The position numbers were made by a program, and so were the translations under genes. Below the pieces are notes generated by a model. It saw only the letters and a list, made by a program, of their open reading frames with translations. It ran no database searches and was not told the origin of the DNA. DNA of 64,000 nt from Sminthopsis crassicaudata (taxonomy: Eukaryota), in assembly GCF_048593235.1 (NCBI RefSeq), contig NC_133619.1, forward strand, positions 640,500,558-640,564,557, written 5' to 3'. Of this stretch, positions 230 to 17,129 are shown in pieces; positions within the stretch are counted from its first letter, which is position 1; each line of letters starts with the position of its first letter.

Positions 230-1767
230 AACTGCAGGGCATTATCATTGCCACCAAAGGGTGCTTCCGCGAGACCCTGCAGGAGCCCACCGTTGTCAAG
301 TACACGCAGCCCCCGGGCGTGGCAGCCACGTCCTACACGCACTTCTGCTCCACCGACTTCTGTAACAATTACACTGACCCAAAGCCGCTGACGAAGCCCC
401 CGAGAGGGGCAGGTGAGAATGAGAATGGGTGGGGGGCCAGGGACTCAGCCTTGGAGGAGCATCTCTGACCCTGCTGTGCGCTCAAGCAGGGCCTTCCGCT
501 CCAGGCCTCAGTCTGCCCCTCTGCAAAGTGGGCCCGTCCCAGATAAGGTTCCATGGAGCTTTATGGTTCTATGGACTAGACGGGCCCTAAATCCTGCAGT
601 GACCCTGATGTTCAGTCACAGCCCAACCCTTGGGACCCACCTGGGGTTTTCGTGGCAAATGTATCAGAAGGGTTTGCCATTTCCTTCCAGATGAGGAAAC
701 TGAGGCAATTGCCCAGGATTCTAGGGTCAGACAGCTAGTAAGTACCAGAGGCTGGACTTGTACTTGGGTCCTCCTGAGTCTGAACCCAGGGAGCTCTCTG
801 CTGTGCTACCCAGCTGGCCACTCTGATGAGCCGGACAAGGTTGAATGGGAAACAGCTGGATTATTGCAGACCTTGGAGGAGAGTCCCTATGGATCAATAT
901 GGAAGGAAATGGCTGATGGATTCAAGCAGGGAGGGATGGGAAGGACCCCCGGGGGTGGGAACGCTCCCTGGATTTGGAGCCAGTGGGTCTGGGCGATCCT
1001 GGGGTCTCAGTGGCCTGAACTGAAGGATCCGACCTCCAGGGTCCCCTCCTGCTCTGCCAGACTGAGCCAGGCCTCAGACCCATGGATGTGGCAGTGGGGT
1101 GGCAGGGCCCCCAGTCAAAAGTTGGCAGTCCGGGTCAGTTACAGCAGAGGGCCTTGGCTGCAGCCCTGCAGAGCTTGGACTTTGCCTCCCCCCCCCCTCC
1201 CGGTTCTAGGCGCTGGGGCCTCTTGCTTGTGAGAGCTCAGGGACACCGTCCCCACTGATGGCCTTTCTCCCCCCCTTCCAGTCAGCCCCCACCGAGAGGG
1301 CCTCATGTGCCCCACCTGCGTCTCCCTGGGGCCCTGCGTCCCCGGCTCCCCGGTCATGCACTGCCCCAAGCTCACCCTCTCCTGTTACAGCGGGACCATC
1401 ATGATCAAGGGAGGTGAGTGGCCAGATGGGCGGGGAAGGGGCTGCCCCATCGGGAAGGTCCGGCTCTCAGAGGACACCGGGGTCCCCCAGGGCTGTGGGG
1501 CGCACCCCTGGGCGGTGCCTGGAGACCGGAGAGCCCTGCTGAGCACCCTCCCCCACAGGAGGCATCTGGACTCCAGTGGACCTGGAGGGCTGCATGGGCG
1601 AGATCAGCTGCCGCCTGCTGAACAAAACGCACACCATTGGGCCCCTGGAAGTGAACGAGCTGTGTGACCGCAGCAGCTTGTTCGAAAACTTCAGGATGGA
1701 CGGGGCCAGCTGCCTGCTCCCCGCCTTTGGGTGGGCTCTGGGCCTGGGCTTCCTGCTGCTCCTGTAG
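230..1767 (+). CDS. TEX101-like (CD177/TEX101 clade) GPI-anchored Ly6/uPAR protein, 3' part only (5' exons lie left of the window)
   Basis: Three phase-1 GT-AG exons: 230-412, 1282-1413, 1559-1767 (TAG). Translation: ELQGIIIATKGCFRET...PPGVAATSYTHFCSTDFCNN / LMCPTCVSLGPC...CPKLTLSCYSGTIMIKGG / GIWTPVDLEGCMGEISCRLLNKTHTIGPLEVNELCD...GASCLLPAFGWALGLGFLLLL*. The Cys spacing and hydrophobic GPI signal match TEX101/CD177. ATKGC, the retained final Cys (ELC) and GASCL favour TEX101 over CD177. Confidence 0.85.
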
Positions 1768-2490: not shown

Positions 2491-4151
2491 GGTTTGATTA
2501 TGTTTTACATTTATTAAATTATTTTGTCAAAAAAATTTACTGGCACTAAATCTCACATACATGCAGCCTTAAACACCTGTTTCTGACTATGAACCCCCTA
2601 GTTTTTGGTGACTCCCTCTTTCTTCCCCCTCCCTCCAGCCTCAGCCCCGACTCTCTCATCATGATAATGGCTGCTGACATTTACCCAGTGCTGGGCTCGC
2701 CCTTTTCACAGATTCCTTCCGATCCCTGGGAGGTAGATCCTGTTCTCATTTCATAATTACAGAAATTGAAGCAGATGCGAAGTGACCTTCTAGGAGTCAT
2801 GCAGTAAGGCTGGATTTGAACTTGGGGCTGTCTGCTTTTCCTGCCCCCCCCCACTTTAGCTATGATTCATGTGATTTAGAATTCTAGTTTCCAGTTTAGC
2901 CCAAACTTATTTTTTCCCTGAGAAAGCATAGCCCAAAGGGGTCAAATGACCCTGCCAGGGTGCCAGGGCAGGGCGAGATCAGTCCCAGGGCCTCTCCCCA
3001 TTCCAAACTCTTCCACCTCTCCCCCCAGCAGCAACAAGCCTCCCCTGGGCTTCTTGCTGCTGCTGGGAGTGCATGAACTCCTAAAGGATGCTCGGGTCCT
3101 GGGTCCCGGTTAGCTGAGATGCTCCTGTTGGAGGAAGGCCTTTCTTCGTCTCAAGGCTCCAGGCCAGAATCTCCCTGGATCTCCCACTTGGCCTTTCCAG
3201 GAGGTGGCCTGGCGGCATGTGCAGGAGGAACGGGCAGCAGTCTCATTATGAACAGCACTAATTGTTTGAGGCTTTTTACTTCTCCCTCGGTGCCCGGAGC
3301 TAGTTGGGCCCCAGGCCCAAACCCTGGTTCTTTGAGCCACATCCTGCCCTCCTCCACGCCATCTCCCCCGAGGTGACATCTATGGTGACCAGAGACTGCT
3401 AAGCAAGTCCAGGGTCCCCCTGCCCCACCTCCAGCCTAGGAACCGGGAGGCCCCTGGAAAGCTGCTGCGGATGCACACAGAGCAAACCCATTTGGGCAGT
3501 GGTGAAGCCGGGCTGAAAGCCGTCGTCCCGGTGCCTGGCTGTGTGAGCAGACCTCTTCCACTCAGGCCTCTGGGAGCCTCCAGCAGGAGGCCAGGAGTGG
3601 GCTTGGTCAGTCTGCAGGCCCTCCAGGCATGTCCCGGCCTTCCTCTGGAAGGACCACCTACACAAACTCGTGCACAGGGACTGCAGACACTACATGGATC
3701 CTGAGGCCCGGGCGCAAATACTGAGGGCCTTGATTTGAATCTGGGACTTCTACTCCCAAGTTTGAGGCCCAAGGGCCGGCAAGAGTGGAGCACTTATCAG
3801 CCTCCTAGAAACAGGGGCCATGTTAGTGGCTGGGGAGGGAGGAGGTCCCACCTAAAGGAAGCGGGTAACTATTAGGAGCTCCCAGAGAAGGGGACTGGCT
3901 TCTGATACTGGCGATCCGTGCTAAGGGCTGGCGGCAGATAGGGGGCACAGAATAGTCCGTTTAAATCTTTATTTGATACCTGTGTGGTAGGCATCCCTGG
4001 GCTAGGGCTGCTGCACTTTGGGCACACCTCCTACCCCTGGGATCCCAGGGCCGCCGCCTCTGCCAGCCCCTAGGCAGCCCACCGTGTAGGGGGCTCCCTC
4101 TGCCCGGCTTCTGGGAGACTGGCGGGACGTCCAGGTCGAGGACACCTCGGC

Positions 4152-7100
4152 CTACAGAGTGATGAGCAGTCCCAGCATGAGGGTCCAGAGCCAACCGGGT
4201 CGAGGCACGCTCTGGCTCCTGGGCCACAGGAGGCTGTGGTGGTCCACACACTTCTCGCTCAGCGTGAAGGAGCCCACCGTCTCCATGCCGAGGAACAGCT
4301 CACAGGTGGGCACGGTGGAGCAGCCGAGCAAACCCAGCACGTAGGAGGTGCTTTCTGTGGAGGAGGAAGAGGGCCGGTGGGTGCCCTGGGGCCCAGGGCC
4401 ACAAAGGCCCTGCTTCTGCCACCAACTGGGGCCTCCGGTGCCCATAAAATGACTTAGATGGCCTCGAGGGGCCCAGACCCTCAGCTAGGAACCAAGGCCC
4501 TGGGCCAGAGGATCGAGGTGGTGTAGAGCCTCATACAGCCGAGAACCTCTGTGGCCCAGAGCCTCCTGTGGCAGAAAGCCTATGATGGAGGGCCTCCTGC
4601 GGTGGAGGCCCCAAATTTTGCATTCTAGCAGCTCACCTGGCCGGGGGGGGGGGGGGGGGAGAGGGCCTAGCTGCATGAACTCTTCTGGGCTCACAACCAC
4701 CTCTGCGGCTGAGGGAGCGGCCCGGGGCCTTTCCAAGCCCAGCGTTCCCTCTGACACTCGAGCTGGGCAGGAGGCGCCTCAGGCCCAACTCTGTCCAGCC
4801 GGTGGCCCAGAGATCACACAGATAGAGGCAGCACCAGGGCTCAATGCCCGTTCTTGCCCCCCCATGCCCATGGCCATGGAAACCAGGAACCTGGCTCCAG
4901 AGGATGGCTCTGCCCCTCCCGTGGGCCAGGGAACCGCTCCCCACTGCCGCCGGGCCAGCACTCACCTCCCTTGATAATAATGGTTCCGTTGTAACACCTG
5001 AGGGTCTTCTCGCCGCACCGACGGAAGCGGACCTTTGTGGGGCAGGAGTACAAGGCCAAGCAGGTTGGGCATCGCAAGGCCTGGTCTGGGTTTTTGATGA
5101 CTGGAGGAAGGGAAGGGGCATGGCTGCGGCCTGTGGGCACTGAGGAGGAGTGCCCAGGAGAGGGGGGCCTGGGGTCCCAGGGAGGCCCTTCTCTGTGGGC
5201 AGCCTCTGCCCAACGGTCTCTCCTTCAAGCCATCTTTCACTCCAGCCCCCCAGTATTCTAGCAGGCCCCGTCTTGTGGATGTGGGCCTTCTGCCTGCCCC
5301 CATGACACTGACTATCCCCCCCCAGCCCCCTCCCTCCCTGCACTGCCAGGGCTGAGCCCCGCTGCCCATCAGTTAGCCCGGGCCCTGGCTGTAGGCCAGC
5401 CCCCATGATACTGACTGCCCCCCCACTGGTCCCTTCCCTCCCTGCACTGCCAGGGCAGAGCCCCGCTGCCCATCAGTTAGCCCCGGGCCCAGCCACAGGC
5501 CCGCCTATCCCCTGCCCGGCATCCTGCACTTCCCGGGGGCCTCCTGCTCCCACTTTGCCGCCACACTGAGCTGCAGATGGGCCCCGGGGCTCACCGGGTC
5601 TACAGCAGCCAAGGCAGGCTCTACTCTGGCTGAGAAGCTGGGAACAAACCCCAGCTGCCTGAGCCCGGTTCCCAGGACCCCCCAGGGGTGCCAGGCTTAG
5701 GTTGTGACGAGTTCTTTGGGAAAACTGAGCGTCACACAGGGTGACCAGCTGGGAATCCACCCAAGGAGCATGGGGACGCGCCACAGCGAGGCAGGCTTGG
5801 GAAATACAGTGAAAAGGGAGAGTGGGGCAGAGGCTTAGTGGAAGAGACTGGAGATTGGGAGGGGGAGAAGTTAGTAGGAGACCAGGAGCTTTGGGCAAAG
5901 GGAGAGGGTCGAGGAGCTCTGGCCACTGGGGGGGGGCACGGAAAGCAGGGGGCGAGCCCCGGCCCCGGGCTACCTAGGTGAGCCTTGGGCCTCAGCACCG
6001 GGGCCGTGCTGCTTGAGTTGTTACAGTAGTTGACATTGCAGAAGCGGACGTAGGAAGTGATAATAATTCCTGGTGGGCCCAAGTGCTCCGTGACCCCCGA
6101 CATCCGGTTCCCTGCTGGAGTGCAGCCCTTACTGCCCATTATCAGTGACTGGGGCCCTAGGAGAGGAGCAGGAGGTTGGCAGAGGCTGGCACCCCCGCGG
6201 GGGGCAGAGGCGCTGGGCCCAAGCTTCGGGTCAGTTAAAAGAGCATAAAGGCCTCTGGACTTCGGTTTCAACCCCCATCCCCCTCTCTACCCGCTGAGTA
6301 ACATCCCCACCGGGATCAGCCCCTTTCTACATGTTGGCACAAGCCGGACGGCTACCCTAAGTGAGGCAAGAATCCAGGGCAGCGGGGGGAGGGGAGGGAG
6401 GCCTTGCTGCCTTCCCCTGGCTTTTAAGATTGGCCAGGAAGGAAACTGAGGACAGAGCCAGGTATCTCATCCAAGAGCTTCTGGAGAGGGGGTGGACAGG
6501 GTCCTTGACATCCCGGACTAAATGGGACTTCCTCCCCATAGCGTCTGGGTGATGGACGGAGGCACCCGTGGACGGTGGTGGGCACGTTGGGCGAGGGCGT
6601 TCTGCGGCTCGGGGCCGCTCCTGGCTGGGAAGTGGGGGTCAAGCCCTGCACCCCGAGAACCGCCGGCCAGCTTGGCCGGGAAGGTGCTTTTTGAGCAGCG
6701 CCCCCCAGCAGGGGGTCCCAGCAGGGCGGGGCACAGCCAGGGCGCAGGGGGAAGCCAGCCCATGGCAGAGGGCACACTGGCAGGGTCGGGGCCCCCCCCT
6801 ACTCCCACATCACCGGGTCCTCCACACACGTGGCACCAATATCCGCGTAACCGCTTTTCCATCTTTTGTGCCGTGCAATAACCTGTCCGGGCATCCCAGG
6901 GCACAGGGCCTTTAATTGTCGCCTTTTCTATGGCATTTGAGACCCATCTTTGGTTTTGACCCAGTGGCCTCTGGCTGGCGCGTCCCGGTAATTACACCAT
7001 GAGTTTTAATGGGCGCTGACCCCCAGGGGAGAGCGGCCATGTCAGGGATGACCCCAGAGGGCACGTATAGAAGAGAAGCCTGGGGTTCAGAGAGGGCCCG

Positions 7101-8446
7101 TGAATCATAAATCGCAGATTATAACAATTGGGACACTTCTGGCAATCAATAGTGACCCTTCTTCATATTCTCGACAAGTACCCGGCCTCGAGAACTCTAA
7201 AGCAGCCCGATTCAAAGCCGCTGACCCCCAGTTTACCTGTCTCCAGCATCAGCAGGGTCTCCTGGCACACCTCCCAGTTCTCGCAGCGCCGGGAGTGCCG
7301 CAGGCTGGAGCTCCAAAGCTCGGGCTCCGAGTTCAGCATCCGCCCCAGGTACAGCATCTCCGTGTGGTAGCAGGTGATGGGGGGCAGCAGTGGGAAGATG
7401 GGGTGTAAGGGGCGGCCCCCTGCAAAGAGAGGGAGGCCCGTCAACCCGCGACCCACACAGTCCGGCCCCCTCCCTGGGGACCCCCATATAACCTGGGCCC
7501 CCTCCCCTGACCCTCCCCACATGGTCCCAGCCCCCCACCCTGACCCTCCCTACTCGGACCCGGCCCCCTCCCTGGGGACCCCATATAACCTGGGCCCCCT
7601 CCCCTGACCCTCCCCCCTGCCAGGGGACTCTGCATGGTCCCGGCCCCCCACCCTGACCCTCCCCGCTCTCTCCCTGGGGACCCCCATACAACCTGGGCCC
7701 CCTCCCCTGACCCTCCCCCCTGCCAGGGGACTCTGCATGGTCCTGGCCCCCCACCCTGACCCTCCCCCCTGCCAGGGGACTCTGCATGGTCCTGGCCCCC
7801 CACCCTGACCCTCCCTGCATGGTCCGGGCCCCCTCCCCTGACCCTCCCCCCTGCCAGGGGACTCTGCATGGTCCTGGCCCCCCCACCCTGACCCTCCCCC
7901 CTGCCAGGGGACTCTGCATGGTCCCGGCCCCCCCACCCTGACCCTCCCCGCTCTCTCCCTGGGGACCCCCATACAACCTGGGCCTCCTCCCCTGACCCTC
8001 CCCCCTGCCAGGGGACTCTGCATGGTCCCAGCCCCCCCACCCTGACCCTCCCCACACAGTCCCAGCCCCCCCACCCTGACCCTCCCTGCATGGTCCCAGC
8101 CCCCTCCCCTGACCCTCCCCGCTCGGACCCGGCCCTCTCCCTGGGGACCCCCATACAACCTGGGCCTCCTCCCCTGACCCTCCCCACACAGTCCCAGCCC
8201 CCCACCCTGACCCTCCCCGCTCTCTCCCTGGGGACCCCCATACAACCTGGGCCTCCTCCCCTGACCCTCCCCGCACGGTCCCAGCCCCCCACCCCGACCC
8301 TCCCCGCTCGGACCGGGCCCCCACCCCGACCCTCCCCGCTCGGACCGGGCCCCTCCCCGGGGACCCCCCACGGACGCCCACACACCAGGCTGGGCCAGGG
8401 AGGCTCCCACGAGTCCGAGCAGCAGCGGGAAGGCCGGACAGCCCAT
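4152..8446 (-). CDS. Two-LU-domain GPI-anchored Ly6/uPAR protein of the CD177/TEX101/LYPD4 clade (about 254 aa); orthology unresolved
   Basis: Five exons, all phase 1: 8446-8386 (MGCPAFPLLLGLVGASLAQP signal peptide, Kozak accATGG), 7419-7237, 6156-5974, 5100-4966, 4354-4152 (TAG). Total 765 nt with no internal stop. Domain 1 has 6 Cys (ITC...RRCENWEVCQETLLMLETGPQSLIMGSKGC...SYVRFCNVNYCNN). Domain 2 has 8 Cys (LRCPTC...SEKC). Hydrophobic tail GWLWTLMLGLLITL*. Minus-strand AATAAA at 3968-3973. Confidence 0.9.
5300..5490. repeat. About 104-bp imperfect tandem duplication in intron 3 of the second LU gene
   Basis: catga.actgact...ccctccctgcactgccagggc.gagccccgctgcccatcagttagccc occurs at about 5301 and about 5404. 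Confidence 0.8.
7466..8360. repeat. Modular C-rich (G-rich on the minus strand) minisatellite filling intron 1 of the second LU gene
   Basis: Shuffled modules ccctgaccctcccc, tgccaggggactctgcatggtcc and ctggggacccccata(c/t)aacctgggcc repeated over about 900 bp. Confidence 0.95.
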
Positions 8447-8849
8447 GGTGCGGGGTCTGCAGTTGTCCCTGGCCCCTGGGACCCAGGAAGAGAGCAGGGC
8501 AATGAAGGGCACCCTTGCTAGGACGCTCCTGTCCGCTCCTCCCCCAGACCCCGCTCCGGGGTCTTCTGGGCCAGCAGACCCCGCATCCGCCCCATGTCAG
8601 GCCCCTCCCATCACCGCTCCCACCCCCAGGACGCTCGGTGCCCCCCAACCCCACAACTGGTCTTTAGGTCCCAGAGAGAGGAGCCTCCTAGGGGTGTTCA
8701 GAGAAGCCTCCTCCCCATCCCTCCTCCATCCGGAGCCCCACAACCCCTGCTTCCTTCCTTCCCAATCAACGAGCATTTATGTGCCCACGCCAAGACCCCC
8801 CCCCAGTCTCCTCTCTCTCCAACACAGAAAGCTCCTCCCCTCCAACTCT

Positions 8850-9460: not shown

Positions 9461-10249
9461 GGAGAGTCCCTTACAAAAATGGGCCAGAAAAGTCCAAGCC
9501 GAGCAGACCCCACAAACTTGAGAGGTGGACAAAACAACAAAGCTGTAGTTTAGCTCCCCTGTTTTCTGCTTCCCCGTCTCTTTCTGTGGTATCTCCCAAA
9601 ATGCCTGGGAGGTTCAGAGAGTGGGAGATACTACGATGGAGAGATGGGGGGAGAAATCTGCCCCCACATGGAAGGCTCAGATGTTACTAAGGGGATTCAA
9701 ATCCTGCCCCGCACATCCAGCCCCCTTTCCAGGGTATCCAGGGGGTCCTAACGGCTGCAGCTGGCTCGTCAGTATCTCTGCAAAGTTTGCTATCTTCTCC
9801 ATCGGGTGTCTGAGAGGGAGAGTTGGAGTGCTGTTAGCAACCCCATTATGCAGAGGAGCAAACTGAGGTTTCCCAAGGTCACACTGCTTTTAAAGGTCAG
9901 AGGCAGCATCTCATCCCGAGCATACTCTTGGTCCCACACCCCGCCCACTACACCATCCTGCCTGCCTGCCTCAGAACAGACCACAGGGGTTCCTTCCAGG
10001 TCTGAATGTGTATTTCACGTTGCCATGGTTCTGGTAATAACATTGTCTCATTTTATCCTCACAACAACAAGAGTAGCAGATGCTGTTATTATTCCCATTT
10101 TGTGGCTGTTTCCTTGGCAGAGTGGAGCGACTTGCCAGTTTTCTTCTTCAGCTCATTTTACAGATGAGGGAAACTGAGGCTCCCATAGATTCGATCCTTT
10201 TTTCCAGCCCTAACCTCTCTCCTGATTTCCAGTCTCATCTCTCCAACTA

Positions 10250-12260: not shown

Positions 12261-15200
12261 TCACAGGAGGGTCCGGGCAGCGGTGGCTGCCAGGAGCGCG
12301 GCCAGCGGAAGGGCCAGGGGGGTCCTGGGGCTCCCACTGGTGGGGTGCTGGGAGCCGCCCTTAGGGGGCAGCTGCCCCATGTTGCTTCGATCGCTGTGCC
12401 CCGCGGCCCCCCTGCCGGCCCCGCCCTCCTCGCTGAGAGTCGCCACAGATGTCCCGGAGTGAGCGGGCGCCTCGGTGGCGGGGGCCCGGAGCGTGGTGGC
12501 CGGGGGCCGGCTGCTGGGGGCGGCCGGGGCCGCGGTGGAAGCGGGGGCGGGGGCCTTTGTGGCTGTGGAATTGGGGCGGGCGGTGGTGGGCGCGGGCAGC
12601 ACCACGAGGGGAGGGATGCCAGGGGCAAAGTAGGTCTTGTTGCGGAGGTCGGCGTTGCAGCGGGAGCCCTCGCAGCAGGAGCCGCTCAGGGAGAAGCCGG
12701 GGCCGGTCACCCCGTCTCTGGTGCAGTCCTCGTCCTGGACGCAGCCTCGGACTGGCAGGGACACGGTCACGTTGGCTGAGGGAGACCAAGGGGCGGGGCA
12801 GTGGTTAGAGCCCCGCGGCGGGAGGGGTCGGGGAGGGGCTCGGGAAGCCCCCGACCCCCCTCAGCTCTCCCCCTCATGCACCGAACACCCCTGAGGGAAT
12901 CCCTCGCCCTCTCCGGCCTCAGTTTCCAAATCTGTATAAAGGTCCCCGATTCCGCTCTGGGGGTTTTCGGGTGACCGACGGATTCTCCGAGGGGGCTGGG
13001 CCGCGATGGAGGGGGAGGGGTCCTCTGCCGGGGGACTCTCCGCGAGCATCTGCAGCCCTTCTCTCCCCGCTGCGGCTCTTCTCTCTCCTCCAATCACCTT
13101 CCACGTATCACCTGGGTACACGACGCGTCCCCCTCCCCTCCCCCGTAAGTCGCCTGAGGGCAGGGACCGTTTCTTTGGGGGGTGGGGGGTGCCCTTGGGC
13201 GCTGTTTCCCAGGAGGCGGGGCGGCGCCCCATCCCCCACCCCTGCCGTCCCCCTCACCTGCGGTCAGGGTGACGTTCCCGTCAAAGCAGCCCTTGTGCAG
13301 GCGGTCCCTCGCGTTGTAGCACTGCGCCAGGGGGGGCTTCGAGCCCGCGCACGCCTCCCGGCTCAGCCCCGCGCAGCTGTAGCACTGGACTCCGTTGGGC
13401 TCGTGCGCACTCTCGTTCCCTGGGGGCGACGGAAGGGGGCCGCGGGTGAGATGTTCCGCGGGCTTCCCCGAGTCTCCGCGCCCCCCCCCGCCCCCTTCTC
13501 AGTCTGCTCCCGGTCCCCCTGCGCCCCTAGAAAGCGCACACGGAATCCATTCACACCCAGGGACGCGGGCTTTCGGGGAAACCGAGGCAGGCTCTGACTG
13601 CTGGACAGCCTCCTTCCCCGGGGCCCGGCTTAGGTCCGGTGGCTCCTCCCGAGAAATACTTTACAAATCGTATTTTCCCCAGTTACTTGGAATGACAGTT
13701 CTCTCATATTTTAAAATAAGGTTCGAGTTCAAAGTCTTCTCCCTCTCCCCTCCCTAAGACTGTAAGCAACTTGCATAATTATACATGCACAAACATGCAA
13801 AATAGCTTCCAAATATTAAAAAAAATCCCATGCACCCCACGCAGTCCTTTCTTCTCCTGGGCCCCGCCCATTTCTGCAGGTGATGCTCATGGGCTTCCTT
13901 GGCGAGAATGAGGGCTCCTTCCTCCGGACCGCCCCCAGCTTCTCACTGACCTTGGCAAAAGGAAGAGCCCAGCCTGAGTCCAACCTTCCTTCTGGGGCCA
14001 CCCAAGGCAGCGGAGGCCGGGCCGGGCCCATCCCAGACACCGAACGTGCCTTTCTGAATGCACTAAGATCAAATCAGCTTTCTGGGGTTTTTTGATCTCT
14101 ATTAAACTTGTGGTCCACTAACATTCGCAGATCTTTTTCTGCTCCCTCCATTTTGTACTTGAGAAGTTAGTTTTGTTTTTCCTTTTCATTGAAATGTAGA
14201 AGCTTACATTTAGTAAGTCATTTTTGGCCAGCTAGGTGACTGAGTCTGGAGTCAGGAAGCCTCATCTTTGGGAGCTCAAATCTGGCCTCTGACACTTAAC
14301 CCTTCCTGGCTGTGTGACCCTGGGCAAGTCGCTTAACCCCAAATGCCCCAGCCAAAAAAAAAAAAAAAGTTATCTTAATGTTTTTTAATGAAGCATTTTG
14401 CAAAAATTAAAATGCTATATAAATGTAGGGTAATATTAAGTTTTATTTTCTACTTGTTTCTCAATTGGGACAAAATAGGAGGGAGGGATTAATTAAATTA
14501 ATTTAATCAAAAAATTAATTTAATTAATAATTAAGTTAGTTATTTTAAATTAAAATTCATTTTTGATATTTTATATCTATTGTTTGGCATGTGTATAGAC
14601 AGCTGTATAAAACAAAGATGAGGAAATAAAATTTGTTTTTACAAAGATTATCTATGTACACATTTACATATATATCTAAAGCAAGGATTGTTTTAAAAAT
14701 AAAAATTAAAAATGTCATCTTATTGGAACTGACCCAAGATCCCATCATGCTGCAGTCTTTTGGAATCCAGACAGTTATCCAGAGTCTTGGAATCACTGCC
14801 CCGCCCCGCCTCTTGTGACATTTGTCATGAGCTTACTACCTCTAGCCCAGGTCCAAGCAGAGGTTCCCTCCTCTAGAGCCTTCCTAGGGAGACCAAGCCT
14901 TAATGGCAGCTCCTTGAGTCTGTCTGTTTCACCAGTTCTGCCCCGCTTGAGGACATCCTCCATTTTGGCCAAGAAAAAAACCGTATGAGATCCTTGGTCA
15001 TAGGCTTGGCAAAAATGCCCATCAACGCTACCAGGCCCAGTGCAGCAACCTGGCAAAAATGGAGCTAAGCTCCCTAATAAAGGTGGGGTTTAGAGTTGCA
15101 TCCTGGGAATCATCTAGTCCCATCTCTTCATTTTACGAAGGGGGACCCCAGGTAGAAGTGGCTACGTCACATGACCAGAGAACGGCAGAAACAGAATTTA

Positions 15201-17129
15201 AATCCAGAGGCTCTGGTTCCCAATGAAGAGAACCGGGCCCCTGCGCCCCCTCCCTGGAAGCCGGGGCCCTTGGCTCACCGCTGGGGTTCAGGTGGTGTGA
15301 GGTCAGGTTGAGCTGGTTGTTACATAGGTCCTTGTCACACTGCTGCAGCTGGAGGAAGGCCATGATCCCGTGCAGGTCCAGCCCCCGGTCGTTCTTTCCC
15401 GAAAGTCCGGATCCACAGCCTCGGATAGCCATCGAGAACTGCCCGTGAACTGCAGGGAAGACCCGGGGTGTGGGGTGGGGTGAGAAGAGAAGGGTCAGAC
15501 CAGGGAGGAGTTAAGGAGGACCAGGAGAGGGAGGACTCAGAGGGAGACTCCAGAGGAGGAGGACTTGGAAGTGGAGAAGTGAGAGAAGGAAGACTCAGAG
15601 GGAGGACTAAGAGGGAGGATCCAGAGAGAAGGATCCAAAAGGGAAAGATCCAGAGGGAAGGATGCTGAGACTGGGTGGGTGGGAGAAGTCAGAGAGAGGT
15701 TTGAGAGGAAAGAGATCTTGAAGAGCTCATAATGGAGTGAACATTCAAAGCTGGGGAGCAGAGCTCAAAGGGAAGACTCAGAGAGGGAGACTCCAGAGGG
15801 GGAGGACTCAGAAGTGGAGAACTGAGAGGAGGAGGACTCAGACAGAGGGACAACTCAGAGAGGGGAGCAGCCACATGGGGAGTCTCTGAGTCAAAGGTGG
15901 AAGAGGAGATCTGGAGCGAATGGGGGCCCGGGGTTCCATGTGATAAAGCTTCAAGGTCCTGTGGTCTCATCCATAGACGAGCCTGGACCCTCAGGGAAAG
16001 GGTGAGTCTGATGGGGAGAGGGCTGACTCAGAAACCGCTCCCCTCAACTTCCTGGGGCTCCCTCCATCTCCAAATCTTATGACTTCAAGCTCCCCGGACC
16101 CCTGGGCACTTGCTTAACTCCATTGCCAAGGAGACCCCAGGCCGACCCCTTCCCCCCCAGGAGATGGGCCGACCCAGGGGCTTTGTAAGTCTGGATTTAC
16201 CCCATGAAGTCATTCCACACGATGGGCCCCCGACCCTCCTCCCAGGGACTCTTACTCACTGGTCTCCACAGCCCCCACAGCCTCTGTGCAGATCGTTAAG
16301 TCCGCAGGGCAGGTAACCGTCTTCATCTTCCCGGGGGAACATCCTTCATCGGCTTTCTGGATGCAGCTGTAGCATTTAAGAGCCGAGGCACCTGGGACAG
16401 AGTCGAACCACGTCAAGCGCCTTCTTCCCCTCCCAGATTTCTTGGCCCATTCTAGAGGAGCCCTCTCCCGGGGAAGCCCTCTCCCAAGCCTTCTGCCGGC
16501 AGCTCCAAGTCCGGCTGAGAGTGGAGCCCTCCGGGGACCTCCTGAAGAGGGAAGGCCTTCTCCTCCACATCTCCCCCTCACACGAGGGGAGCCCCCTTTC
16601 CTGTGGCCTCAATCTCTGTGGGGACACGAGGTCCCTCTGCAGCTTTTTGAACTGAGTTGTAGCGTTTAAGACCCTCTCCCCAGCCTGGGCCAATCTTCCT
16701 GTGTCCTGTTTTCTAGATGGGAGAGCCAGGTGTGTGGGGGGGCCACACGCTCCTCTCTGTCCAGAGGGGAGACTCCTTTGCCTTGTAAGCATGGGAAGCC
16801 CCCCGTCCTACTCTCCCCAGGGCCAGGGAGCCGAACTCCTCCAGTTAGCTCCTTCTGAGGCCCCCTTGCCCACAGCCCCTCTCCCTGCAGTGGAGAATCT
16901 CCCGTCCCTGTGATCCCCCCTCCTGGCCATAAGGATTATCTCCCCTGCCCCCCGATCGCCTTCTTTCCTGCCCTTCCACTCTTCTGGGCAGGGGGACCTT
17001 TCTGGGCTCCTCTGCCTGGGATGCAGAAGCATCTCCTCCTGCCCAGAGCAACAGTGGCTCACCTGGGCCAAGCAAGGACAAGAGCAGGACGGTGGCCCCG
17101 AGGATCCCTGGGCTGCATTTTTTCTCCAT
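12261..17129 (-). CDS. LYPD3: Ly6/PLAUR domain-containing protein 3 (C4.4A), about 348 aa
   Basis: Exons 17129-17063, 16391-16260, 15449-15279, 13419-13258, 12775-12261 (1047 nt). Reads LKCYSCIQKADEGCSPGKMKTV...HGQFSMAIRGCGSGLSGKNDRGLDLHG...NVTVSLPVRGCVQDEDCTRDGVTGPGFSLSGSCCEGSRCNADLRNKTYF, then an S/T/P/A-rich stalk and GPI signal. Minus-strand AATAAA at 12101-12106. Confidence 0.97.
14228..14370 (+). mobile_element. Marsupial tRNA-derived SINE (WSINE1-like) with poly(A) tail
   Basis: cagctaggtg...ggagtcaggaag...ctcaaatctggcctctgacacttaac..ttcct.gctgtgtgaccctgggcaagtcgcttaaccccaaatgcc..agcc followed by an A-rich tail. Confidence 0.7.
15470..15910. repeat. Purine-rich degenerate repeat in LYPD3 intron 2
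   Basis: gagggagactccagagg..gaggact..gaagtggaga block at about 15541 and about 15783, within GA-rich sequence. Confidence 0.65.

What the first reader, a model, noticed from the sequence alone, without database searches (positions are those of the whole stretch)
4152..8446. Extra, intact, inverted Ly6/uPAR GPI gene between the TEX101-like gene and LYPD3
Seen: a complete 5-exon gene of about 254 aa with signal peptide, 6-Cys plus 8-Cys LU domains, GPI signal and poly(A) signal. It is tail-to-tail with the first LU gene, and its exon 3 has the same 183-nt length. Known: in human this interval runs CD177-TEX101-LYPD3 with no opposite-strand two-LU gene that I know of, and LYPD4 lies elsewhere on 19q13. 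The protein mixes CD177-like (ETGPQ, SKGCT, VTEH) and LYPD4-like features (CY..., PPGxxIxSYxRxC, GSxxxxE, W..xLGLL tail). Mouse TEX101 and LYPD4 are both needed for sperm migration into the oviduct. Inference: this is either a lineage-specific paralog or LYPD4 in its ancestral position. In either case it points to an undescribed marsupial sperm- or neutrophil-surface LU pair. Best novel-gene candidate in the window.
Basis: partly seen in the sequence, partly recalled or inferred. Interest (0 to 1): 0.8.

Follow-up and report, generated by a model that had tools for sequence, protein, structure and literature searches.

The report
Marsupial-only TEX101/CD177-like surface protein gene
This is a real, spliced and conserved gene for a small cell-surface protein related to the sperm protein TEX101; it occurs only in marsupials, and gene databases already predict it under inconsistent names, so it is a modest addition to a known family.

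Summary
The minus strand at 4152-8446 carries a five-exon, 254-aa gene. It has GT-AG introns (all phase 1), a signal peptide, a 6-Cys and an 8-Cys LU domain, a hydrophobic tail and an AATAAA signal. RNA contigs from two libraries show exactly the four predicted splice joints and a 3' end near 3956.

The gene is not unknown. RefSeq predicts orthologs, mostly 254 aa, in at least nine marsupials. They are named "TEX101", "TEX101-like" or "CD177 antigen-like". No paper I found describes it.

- **Neighbour gene:** the plus-strand neighbour is the TEX101 ortholog. It groups with placental TEX101 (support 96/91) and has TEX101's position and orientation.
- **Distribution:** the gene forms a marsupial-only clade. 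Platypus and echidna have no such exons between their TEX101-like gene and LYPD3.
- **LYPD4:** this reading is not supported. CD177 and TEX101 are closer than LYPD4 by sequence and by fold.
- **Origin:** its origin within the CD177/TEX101 group is unresolved, because no AU test rejected any placement.
- **Selection:** dN/dS against the Tasmanian devil is about 0.2, so selection is purifying.
- **Expression:** the same two RNA libraries hold its mRNA and TEX101's, which hints at testis expression. The tissue was not shown.

It is a new member of a known kind, of modest interest.

The parts
8386..8446 (-). Coding exon 1: ATG at 8446 with A at -3 and G at +4, encoding the signal peptide. The 5' UTR runs upstream past 8500.
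   Evidence: The RNA joint 7418|8385 and an X5 contig reaching 353 nt beyond 8500 are.
7237..7419 (-). Exon 2 (183 nt), first half of LU domain 1
   Evidence: RNA joints; same length in Sarcophilus
5974..6156 (-). Exon 3 (183 nt), second half of LU domain 1 (GPQ...SKGCT...VTEH...PPG...FCNVNYCNN)
4966..5100 (-). Exon 4 (135 nt), first half of LU domain 2
   Evidence: weak Pfam UPAR_LY6 hit on the exon alone; RNA joints
4152..4354 (-). Exon 5 coding part (203 nt with stop): second half of LU domain 2, linker and hydrophobic GPI-type tail
3956..4151 (-). 3' UTR, with AATAAA at 3973-3968 and the transcript end at about 3956
7466..8353 (.). GC-rich minisatellite filling most of intron 1, with units of about 33, 50 and 104 nt; G-rich on the transcribed sense strand
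230..1767 (+). Neighbour gene, the TEX101 ortholog: last three coding exons 230-412, 1282-1413 and 1559-1767. Its first two exons lie before the window.
12627..16380 (-). LYPD3 (C4.4A) coding exons for the two LU domains, same strand as the gene under study and upstream of it
   Evidence: Sarcophilus gene order

Best explanation
This is a functional protein-coding gene. It encodes a secreted-pathway, probably GPI-anchored glycoprotein with two Ly6/uPAR (three-finger) domains, and it belongs to the CD177/TEX101 branch of the multi-LU gene cluster.

It is a marsupial-restricted paralog sitting between the true TEX101 ortholog and LYPD3. It most likely arose by a local, inverted duplication of a two-LU unit (TEX101 or a CD177 unit) on the marsupial stem lineage, before opossums and Australian marsupials split. 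It has been kept under purifying selection since.

By analogy with TEX101 and LYPD4, and because its mRNA occurs in the same two RNA libraries as TEX101 mRNA, I infer that it acts on the surface of male germ cells as a binding or chaperone-type partner for other sperm membrane proteins.

Shown: the gene structure, splicing, conservation, fold, synteny and selection. Inferred: the GPI anchoring, the tissue, the function and the time and source of the duplication.
For: - **Structure and splicing:**
- **Orthologs:** they occur in Sarcophilus (92.5% identity), Vombatus, Notamacropus, Petaurus, Dromiciops, Monodelphis, Macrotis and Trichosurus. Most are 254 aa. The exon lengths in Sarcophilus are identical.
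- **Selection:** dN/dS against Sarcophilus is 0.16-0.27, with dS 0.16-0.23.
- **Family membership:** Pfam UPAR_LY6 scores E 8e-12 on the ortholog. The AlphaFold model of the ortholog has pLDDT 81. It matches the crystal structures of CD177 (TM 0.68, rmsd 2.2, 32% identity) and TEX101 (TM by target 0.87).
- **Trees:** the gene forms a marsupial-only clade (100/100). The neighbour gene groups with placental TEX101 (94/92, and 96/91 after marsupial CD177 units were added). Marsupial CD177 units group with placental CD177.
- **Synteny:** platypus and echidna have one TEX101/CD177-like gene and then LYPD3 about 2 kb later, with no exons of this gene. In Sarcophilus, wombat and tammar the gene lies just downstream of LYPD3 on the same strand. 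In Sarcophilus the full order is CD177-like, TEX101, this gene, LYPD3.
- **No outside ortholog:** no non-marsupial protein came closer than about 49% identity over exon 3 among 1.84 billion representative proteins.
- **Expression:** the same two RNA libraries (X5, X6) hold this gene and TEX101. Thirteen other runs added under the same species label hold next to none of it.
Against: - The tree does not place the clade. The ML tree puts it weakly (67/80) beside the CD177 N-terminal unit and the monotreme gene, not beside marsupial TEX101.
- AU tests reject none of the six placements tried (p 0.12-0.48). The source and date of the duplication therefore rest on parsimony of presence and absence, not on the tree.
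- Absence from placentals is shown only at the level of annotated proteins. No placental genomic DNA for the TEX101-LYPD3 interval could be searched, so a pseudogene remnant is not excluded.
- The tissue of the two RNA libraries is not on record, so testis is an inference.
- GPI attachment was judged only from the hydrophobic tail.
- The structure and the Pfam score come from the Sarcophilus ortholog, not from the window's own protein.
Confidence: 0.75

Rival explanations
1. It is an old fourth lineage of the CD177/TEX101 group that already existed before marsupials and placentals split (or before monotremes split off). It was later lost in placentals and monotremes.
For: In both trees the clade is as deep as the TEX101, CD177-N and CD177-C lineages, each of which has marsupial and placental members. 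It does not nest beside any marsupial member. Its identity to every other lineage is a flat 27-33%.
Against: This reading needs two independent losses. The monotreme interval is only about 2 kb and holds no remnant. No placental protein of this clade was found among 1.84 billion representatives. The AU test does not reject a sister relation to marsupial TEX101 (p 0.33). Fast early divergence after a duplication gives the same picture.
Confidence: 0.25
2. This gene is the real TEX101 ortholog, as RefSeq names it in opossum and wombat, and the plus-strand neighbour is the extra copy.
For: RefSeq calls it TEX101 in Monodelphis and Vombatus. The AU test does not reject a clade of this gene with placental TEX101 (p 0.33). 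No plus-strand neighbour was called within 10 kb in wombat.
Against: The ML trees join the neighbour, not this gene, with placental TEX101 (94/92 and 96/91). The neighbour has TEX101's position and orientation: downstream of CD177 on the same strand and convergent with LYPD3 (the human order is from general knowledge). This gene is inverted. RefSeq calls the neighbour TEX101 in Sarcophilus and Trichosurus.
Confidence: 0.08
3. It is LYPD4, sitting in an ancestral position next to TEX101.
For: The overall architecture and length are the same. The protein-language-model search ranks the LYPD4 cluster second, almost level with TEX101. Foldseek hits LYPD4 at E 1e-13 to 1e-15.
Against: An exhaustive phmmer search with exon 3 found 49 proteins at E<=1e-3. 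Forty-eight are of CD177, TEX101, rodent CD177-derived, monotreme or this clade's type, and one is an unnamed metagenomic protein. None is LYPD4. LYPD4 identity is 24-27%, below CD177 (31%) and TEX101 (27-33%). I could not fetch LYPD4 sequences, so they are not in the tree. I also could not check whether marsupials have a separate LYPD4.
Confidence: 0.03
4. It is a decaying or non-functional duplicate that happens to be transcribed.
For: It evolves faster than its neighbour, with dN/dS about 0.25 against 0.05-0.10.
Against: The reading frame is intact. All 14 domain cysteines and the exon structure are conserved from opossum to dasyurids. dN/dS is well under 1. The spliced mRNA is abundant.
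Confidence: 0.02

Closest known systems
TEX101 (testis-expressed protein 101; PDB 7BPR/7BPS)
   Same: It is a two-LU-domain, GPI-type protein of about 250 aa with a 6-Cys plus 8-Cys pattern, five coding exons and phase-1 introns. It is the adjacent gene. The fold match has TM by target 0.87. The same RNA libraries hold both mRNAs.
   Different: Identity is only 27-33%. The gene has the opposite orientation. The neighbour gene, not this one, groups with placental TEX101. Exon 2 is 183 nt against 138 nt.
CD177 (NB1/HNA-2a; PDB 9IGP)
   Same: It is the best sequence and structure match: 31-32% identity, rmsd 2.2 Å over about 195 residues to the D3-D4 pair. Exon 3 shares the GPQ, SKGCT, VTEH and PPG motifs with CD177. 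It lies in the same gene cluster.
   Different: CD177 has four or more LU domains (two or more pairs) against two here. Marsupials have their own multi-LU CD177 (Gracilinanus 623 aa, Vombatus 455 aa), and its units group with placental CD177, not with this gene.
Rodent Lypd10/Lypd11-type 'CD177 antigen-like' two-LU genes
   Same: They are also lineage-specific two-LU genes spun off within the same cluster, about 250 aa long.
   Different: They nest inside the CD177 C-terminal unit clade of rodents (99/94 and 100/99). They share only about 29% identity with this gene. They are an independent event.
LYPD4
   Same: It has the same two-LU GPI architecture and length (246 aa), with Foldseek TM about 0.66.
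   Different: Identity is lower (24-27%). It was not recovered by the exon-3 sequence search. In human it lies elsewhere on 19q13 (general knowledge).

Membership tests
Ly6/uPAR (LU) domain superfamily | Significant match to Pfam PF00021 UPAR_LY6 | tested here: met
   The Sarcophilus ortholog (92.5% identical) scores E 8.1e-12, 45.9 bits against a cut-off of 24.8, over residues 149-225. The window's exon 4 alone gives only 18.3 bits. Domain 1 is too divergent for Pfam.
Ly6/uPAR (LU) domain superfamily | Three-finger beta fold held by conserved disulfides | tested here: met
   The AF2 model of the ortholog has pLDDT 81, with domain cores above 90 and all-beta structure. Foldseek matches CD177 and TEX101 crystal structures at E 1e-14 to 4e-18. 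This was tested on the ortholog, not on the window's own protein.
Multi-LU GPI proteins of the PLAUR/LYPD3/TEX101/CD177 cluster | The N-terminal LU domain lacks the 7-8 disulfide (PMC6600238) | tested here: met
   Domain 1 has 6 Cys and domain 2 has 8. Their columns align with those of TEX101 and CD177. Which bonds are missing is inferred from the alignment, not shown.
Multi-LU GPI proteins of the PLAUR/LYPD3/TEX101/CD177 cluster | Each LU domain is encoded by two exons, with the generic intron pattern preserved | tested here: met
   Exons 2+3 encode domain 1 and exons 4+5 encode domain 2. All introns are phase 1, as in the neighbouring TEX101 ortholog.
Multi-LU GPI proteins of the PLAUR/LYPD3/TEX101/CD177 cluster | Signal peptide and C-terminal GPI-attachment signal | tested here: inconclusive
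   The N-terminal stretch has hydropathy 2.0. The C-terminal 14-mer has hydropathy 1.8 and follows a Ser/Pro/Gly linker. The linker has low pLDDT and is followed by a terminal helix. No GPI predictor was available and no experiment was done.
TEX101 orthologs | Forms a clade with placental TEX101 | tested here: inconclusive
   The ML trees exclude it, because the neighbour joins TEX101 at 94/92 and 96/91. The AU test does not reject the alternative (p 0.33).
TEX101 orthologs | Syntenic position: downstream of CD177 on the same strand, convergent with LYPD3 | tested here: not met
   This gene is on the LYPD3 strand. The neighbour gene has the TEX101 position and orientation.
LYPD4 orthologs | LYPD4 is the closest known family by sequence or structure | tested here: not met
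   CD177 and TEX101 rank above LYPD4 in Foldseek, at 31% and 27-33% against 24-27% identity. No LYPD4 appears among the 49 phmmer hits.
LYPD4 orthologs | No other LYPD4 gene elsewhere in marsupial genomes | not testable with these tools
   Only the window and 10-kb flanks of given proteins could be read, and no LYPD4 sequence could be fetched.
CD177 | Four or more LU domains in pairs | tested here: not met
   The 254-aa product has only two LU domains. Marsupials have a separate multi-LU CD177.

The most novel reading that the evidence does not exclude
The gene is a marsupial-specific germ-cell surface partner or sub-functionalised twin of TEX101. Marsupial sperm maturation or sperm-oviduct and sperm-egg interaction would then use a two-gene TEX101 system that placentals lack. 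Alternatively, it is a surviving fourth ancient lineage of the CD177/TEX101 group that placentals lost.
Probability: 0.3. Interest if true: 0.5.

Novelty: new member of a known kind. Interest (0 to 1): 0.35.

Why it matters
TEX101 and LYPD4 are needed for mouse sperm to pass into the oviduct (PMC6744855 and its reference list). The multi-LU cluster is a textbook case of expansion by local duplication (PMC6600238).

A conserved, expressed, marsupial-only member next to TEX101 adds a candidate fertility gene for marsupial reproduction. It also gives a dated example of birth-and-death evolution in this cluster: the gene is older than the split between opossums and Australian marsupials.

On the practical side, it exposes inconsistent RefSeq naming. 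The same gene is called TEX101, TEX101-like or CD177 antigen-like. In opossum and wombat it carries the TEX101 name that belongs to its neighbour, which could mislead cross-species comparisons of TEX101.

Tried and rejected
- **Pfam on single exons:** almost nothing turned up, because LU domains are split over two exons.
- **Spliced window protein:** I did not pass it to remote tools, because it has no reference and I avoided typing it. The 92.5% identical Sarcophilus ortholog P0051 stood in for the structure, Pfam and atlas searches.
- **LYPD4 sequences:** none could be obtained. All three word-based protein searches returned only CD177, TEX101 or this clade. LYPD4 is therefore missing from the tree.
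- **Ortholog DNA:** The look-up of encoding contigs gave no DNA for wombat and tammar. It had no record for the opossum, glider and Dromiciops products. dN/dS is therefore a single pairwise estimate.
- **AU tests:** six placements were tried and none was rejected.
- **Hyena 'LYPD3 isoform X6' (P0044):** I checked it as a possible placental counterpart. It is a CD177-type sequence, 64% identical to bear CD177.
- **Runs X1-X4:** they cover introns evenly and show no joints. They look like genomic or unspliced material and were not used as expression evidence.
- **Earlier scan notes:** searches by gene names found nothing on LYPD4, TEX101 or DMRTC2.
Full report
**1. The observation**

Reading the minus strand of 3800-8800 and splicing it in a script gives five coding exons. 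They are 8446-8386, 7419-7237, 6156-5974, 5100-4966 and 4354-4152, with lengths 61, 183, 183, 135 and 203 nt. Every intron is GT-AG and phase 1. The CDS is 765 nt and encodes 254 aa.

The protein has the following features:
- a hydrophobic N-terminus;
- six cysteines in the first LU domain and eight in the second;
- N-glycosylation sequons at 127/128 and 180;
- a hydrophobic 14-residue C-terminus after a Ser/Pro/Gly-rich linker.

AATAAA lies at 3973-3968 on the minus strand.

**2. Transcription**

RNA contigs from two libraries were laid on 3900-8500. These were X5 and X6; X9 appears to be X6 filed twice. They carry exactly the four predicted joints with GT..AG ends. They cover exons at word depths of 100-470 and introns at about zero, and they end at 3956/3957, 12-17 nt past the AATAAA.

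A minor form retains part of intron 3 at roughly 6-12% of the depth. It matches a RefSeq isoform predicted in bilby.

Thirteen other runs added under the same species label hold next to none of the sequence, so expression is restricted. Runs X1-X4 cover introns evenly without joints and were set aside as genomic or unspliced material.

**3. Relatives**

An exhaustive phmmer search with exon 3 against 1.84 billion representative proteins found 49 hits.
- Two are close: bilby at 92% and opossum at 80% identity.
- By name or by BLAST assignment, 46 of the rest are CD177, placental TEX101, rodent CD177-derived two-LU genes (Lypd10 type) or the monotreme gene.
- One weak hit (P0048) is an unnamed metagenomic protein.
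- None is LYPD4.

Searching with the opossum protein returned only marsupial proteins. They come from Sarcophilus, Vombatus, Notamacropus and Petaurus (254-258 aa) and from Dromiciops, Macrotis, Trichosurus and Monodelphis. RefSeq names them "testis-expressed protein 101", "testis-expressed protein 101-like" or "CD177 antigen-like".

My spliced model is 92.5% identical to the 254-aa Sarcophilus protein and 66-82% identical to the others. The Sarcophilus gene has the same five exon lengths. So the gene is already predicted by automatic annotation, but under three different names. Two literature searches found no paper that treats TEX101 in marsupials.

**4. The neighbours and the gene order**

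The plus-strand gene at the start of the window has its last three exons at 230-412, 1282-1413 and 1559-1767. Over those exons it is nearly identical to the 242-aa Sarcophilus protein that RefSeq calls TEX101, and I rebuilt that Sarcophilus protein exactly from the locus.

LYPD3 exons lie on the minus strand at 12627-16380. In Sarcophilus the order is a CD177-like exon (+), TEX101 (+), this gene (-), LYPD3 (-). Wombat and tammar show LYPD3 followed by this gene on the same strand.

This is the human CD177-TEX101-LYPD3 order (general knowledge; the cluster is listed in PMC6600238) with one extra, inverted gene.

In platypus and echidna a single TEX101/CD177-like gene is followed after about 2 kb by LYPD3 on the opposite strand. 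LYPD3 there is 65-78% identical to devil LYPD3. TBLASTN finds no exons of the extra gene in between.

**5. Phylogeny**

I built a careful IQ-TREE analysis of 56 and then 59 two-LU units. It included CD177 split into its N- and C-terminal pairs, three units of a marsupial CD177, and devil LYPD3 as outgroup. The results were:
- The extra gene forms a marsupial-only clade (100/100).
- The neighbour gene joins placental TEX101 (94/92, then 96/91).
- Marsupial CD177 units 1-2 join the placental CD177 N-terminal pair (98/93).
- Rodent Lypd10-type genes nest in the CD177 C-terminal clade.

The position of the extra gene's clade is not resolved. It sits weakly (67/80) beside the CD177-N plus monotreme group. 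AU tests gave the following:

| Placement tested | p-AU |
|---|---|
| with marsupial TEX101 | 0.33 |
| with all TEX101 | 0.48 |
| with placental TEX101 only | 0.33 |
| with marsupial CD177 unit 3 | 0.41 |
| with marsupial CD177 units 1-2 | 0.16 |
| with the monotreme gene | 0.12 |

None of these is rejected. Mean identities between lineages are a flat 27-33%. The tree therefore says "distinct lineage of the CD177/TEX101 group" and no more.

**6. Origin**

Three facts bear on the origin:
- The gene is present in every marsupial order sampled.
- It is absent from the same interval in both monotremes.
- No member of the clade exists among the annotated proteins of hundreds of placentals.

One gain on the marsupial stem is more parsimonious than two losses. 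The tail-to-tail position and the shared exon plan fit a local inverted duplication. This is an inference, because placental genomic DNA could not be searched for remnants.

**7. LYPD4**

I could not fetch LYPD4 sequences. The test therefore rests on the exon-3 search, which found no LYPD4, and on Foldseek against Swiss-Prot models:

| Match | Identity |
|---|---|
| Human CD177 D3-D4 | 31% |
| TEX101 | 27-33% |
| LYPD4 | 24-27% |
| LYPD5 | 22-25% |

An ortholog would be expected to rank first. The protein-language-model search put the TEX101 and LYPD4 clusters almost level, which shows family likeness only. I give the LYPD4 reading about 3%.

**8. Protein and selection**

The AlphaFold model of the devil ortholog, built on a 30-row alignment, has mean pLDDT 81. 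The domain cores are above 90, the linker is floppy and there is a terminal helix. It matches the crystal structures of CD177 (rmsd 2.2 Å, 32% identity) and of human and mouse TEX101 (TM by target 0.84-0.88). Pfam UPAR_LY6 hits domain 2 at E 8e-12.

The six-cysteine first domain fits the rule that N-terminal LU domains of multi-LU proteins lack the 7-8 disulfide (PMC6600238).

Between the window's species and the devil, dN/dS is 0.16-0.27 (dS 0.16-0.23) for this gene. It is 0.05-0.10 for exons 3-5 of the TEX101 ortholog. Selection is therefore purifying but looser than on the neighbour.

**9. Function**

Nothing here tests function. The two libraries that hold the spliced mRNA are also the only spliced-RNA holders of the TEX101 ortholog. 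TEX101 is a germ-cell marker in placentals, so testis is the likely source, but the libraries' tissues are not on record.

By analogy I propose a GPI-anchored germ-cell surface protein that binds or escorts other sperm membrane proteins. I hold this at about 50%.

**10. Verdict**

The LYPD4 alternative is not supported. "Undescribed" is true for the literature I could search but not for RefSeq. This is a new member of a known kind, of modest interest. It also corrects inconsistent database naming.

Noticed in passing
window 7466-8353: Intron 1 of the gene is almost wholly a GC-rich minisatellite with nested units of about 33, 50 and 104 nt. It is very G-rich on the sense strand (GGGGAGGGTCAGGGTGGGGGG-type runs), so it could form G-quadruplexes in the pre-mRNA. 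In Sarcophilus the same intron is only about 140 nt (exon 1 ends at 10061 and exon 2 starts at 10202 in L001), so the array is a recent expansion.
   Followed up: partly
window 5292-5490: A 104-nt unit is duplicated in tandem (88% match) inside intron 3. The low-level intron-3-retaining RNA contigs (5432-6003) overlap it.
   Followed up: no
L002 10001-12452 (platypus), L003 10001-12468 (echidna): The single monotreme gene in the TEX101 position is named TEX101 in platypus and CD177 antigen-like in echidna. It groups, moderately (89/86 to 90/84), with the CD177 N-terminal unit rather than with TEX101. It may be a pre-duplication or CD177-type gene, so monotreme 'TEX101' orthology looks doubtful.
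   Followed up: partly
wombat locus of P0052 (no DNA served): In wombat no gene is called within 10 kb downstream of this gene, where the TEX101 ortholog should lie, and RefSeq gives the TEX101 name to this gene instead. Either the true TEX101 is unannotated there or it has been lost.
   Followed up: no
proteins P0034, P0131, P0132, P0143 and relatives: The rodent Lypd10-type 'CD177 antigen-like' two-LU genes nest inside the CD177 C-terminal (D3-D4) clade of rodents. They are an independent, rodent-specific spin-off of half a CD177 gene, which parallels the marsupial case.
   Followed up: partly
window 8447 to beyond 8500: An X5 RNA contig continues 353 nt upstream of position 8500. The 5' UTR is therefore long, or there is an upstream non-coding exon. 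LYPD3 ends only about 3.7 kb upstream on the same strand, so read-through from LYPD3 was not excluded.
   Followed up: no
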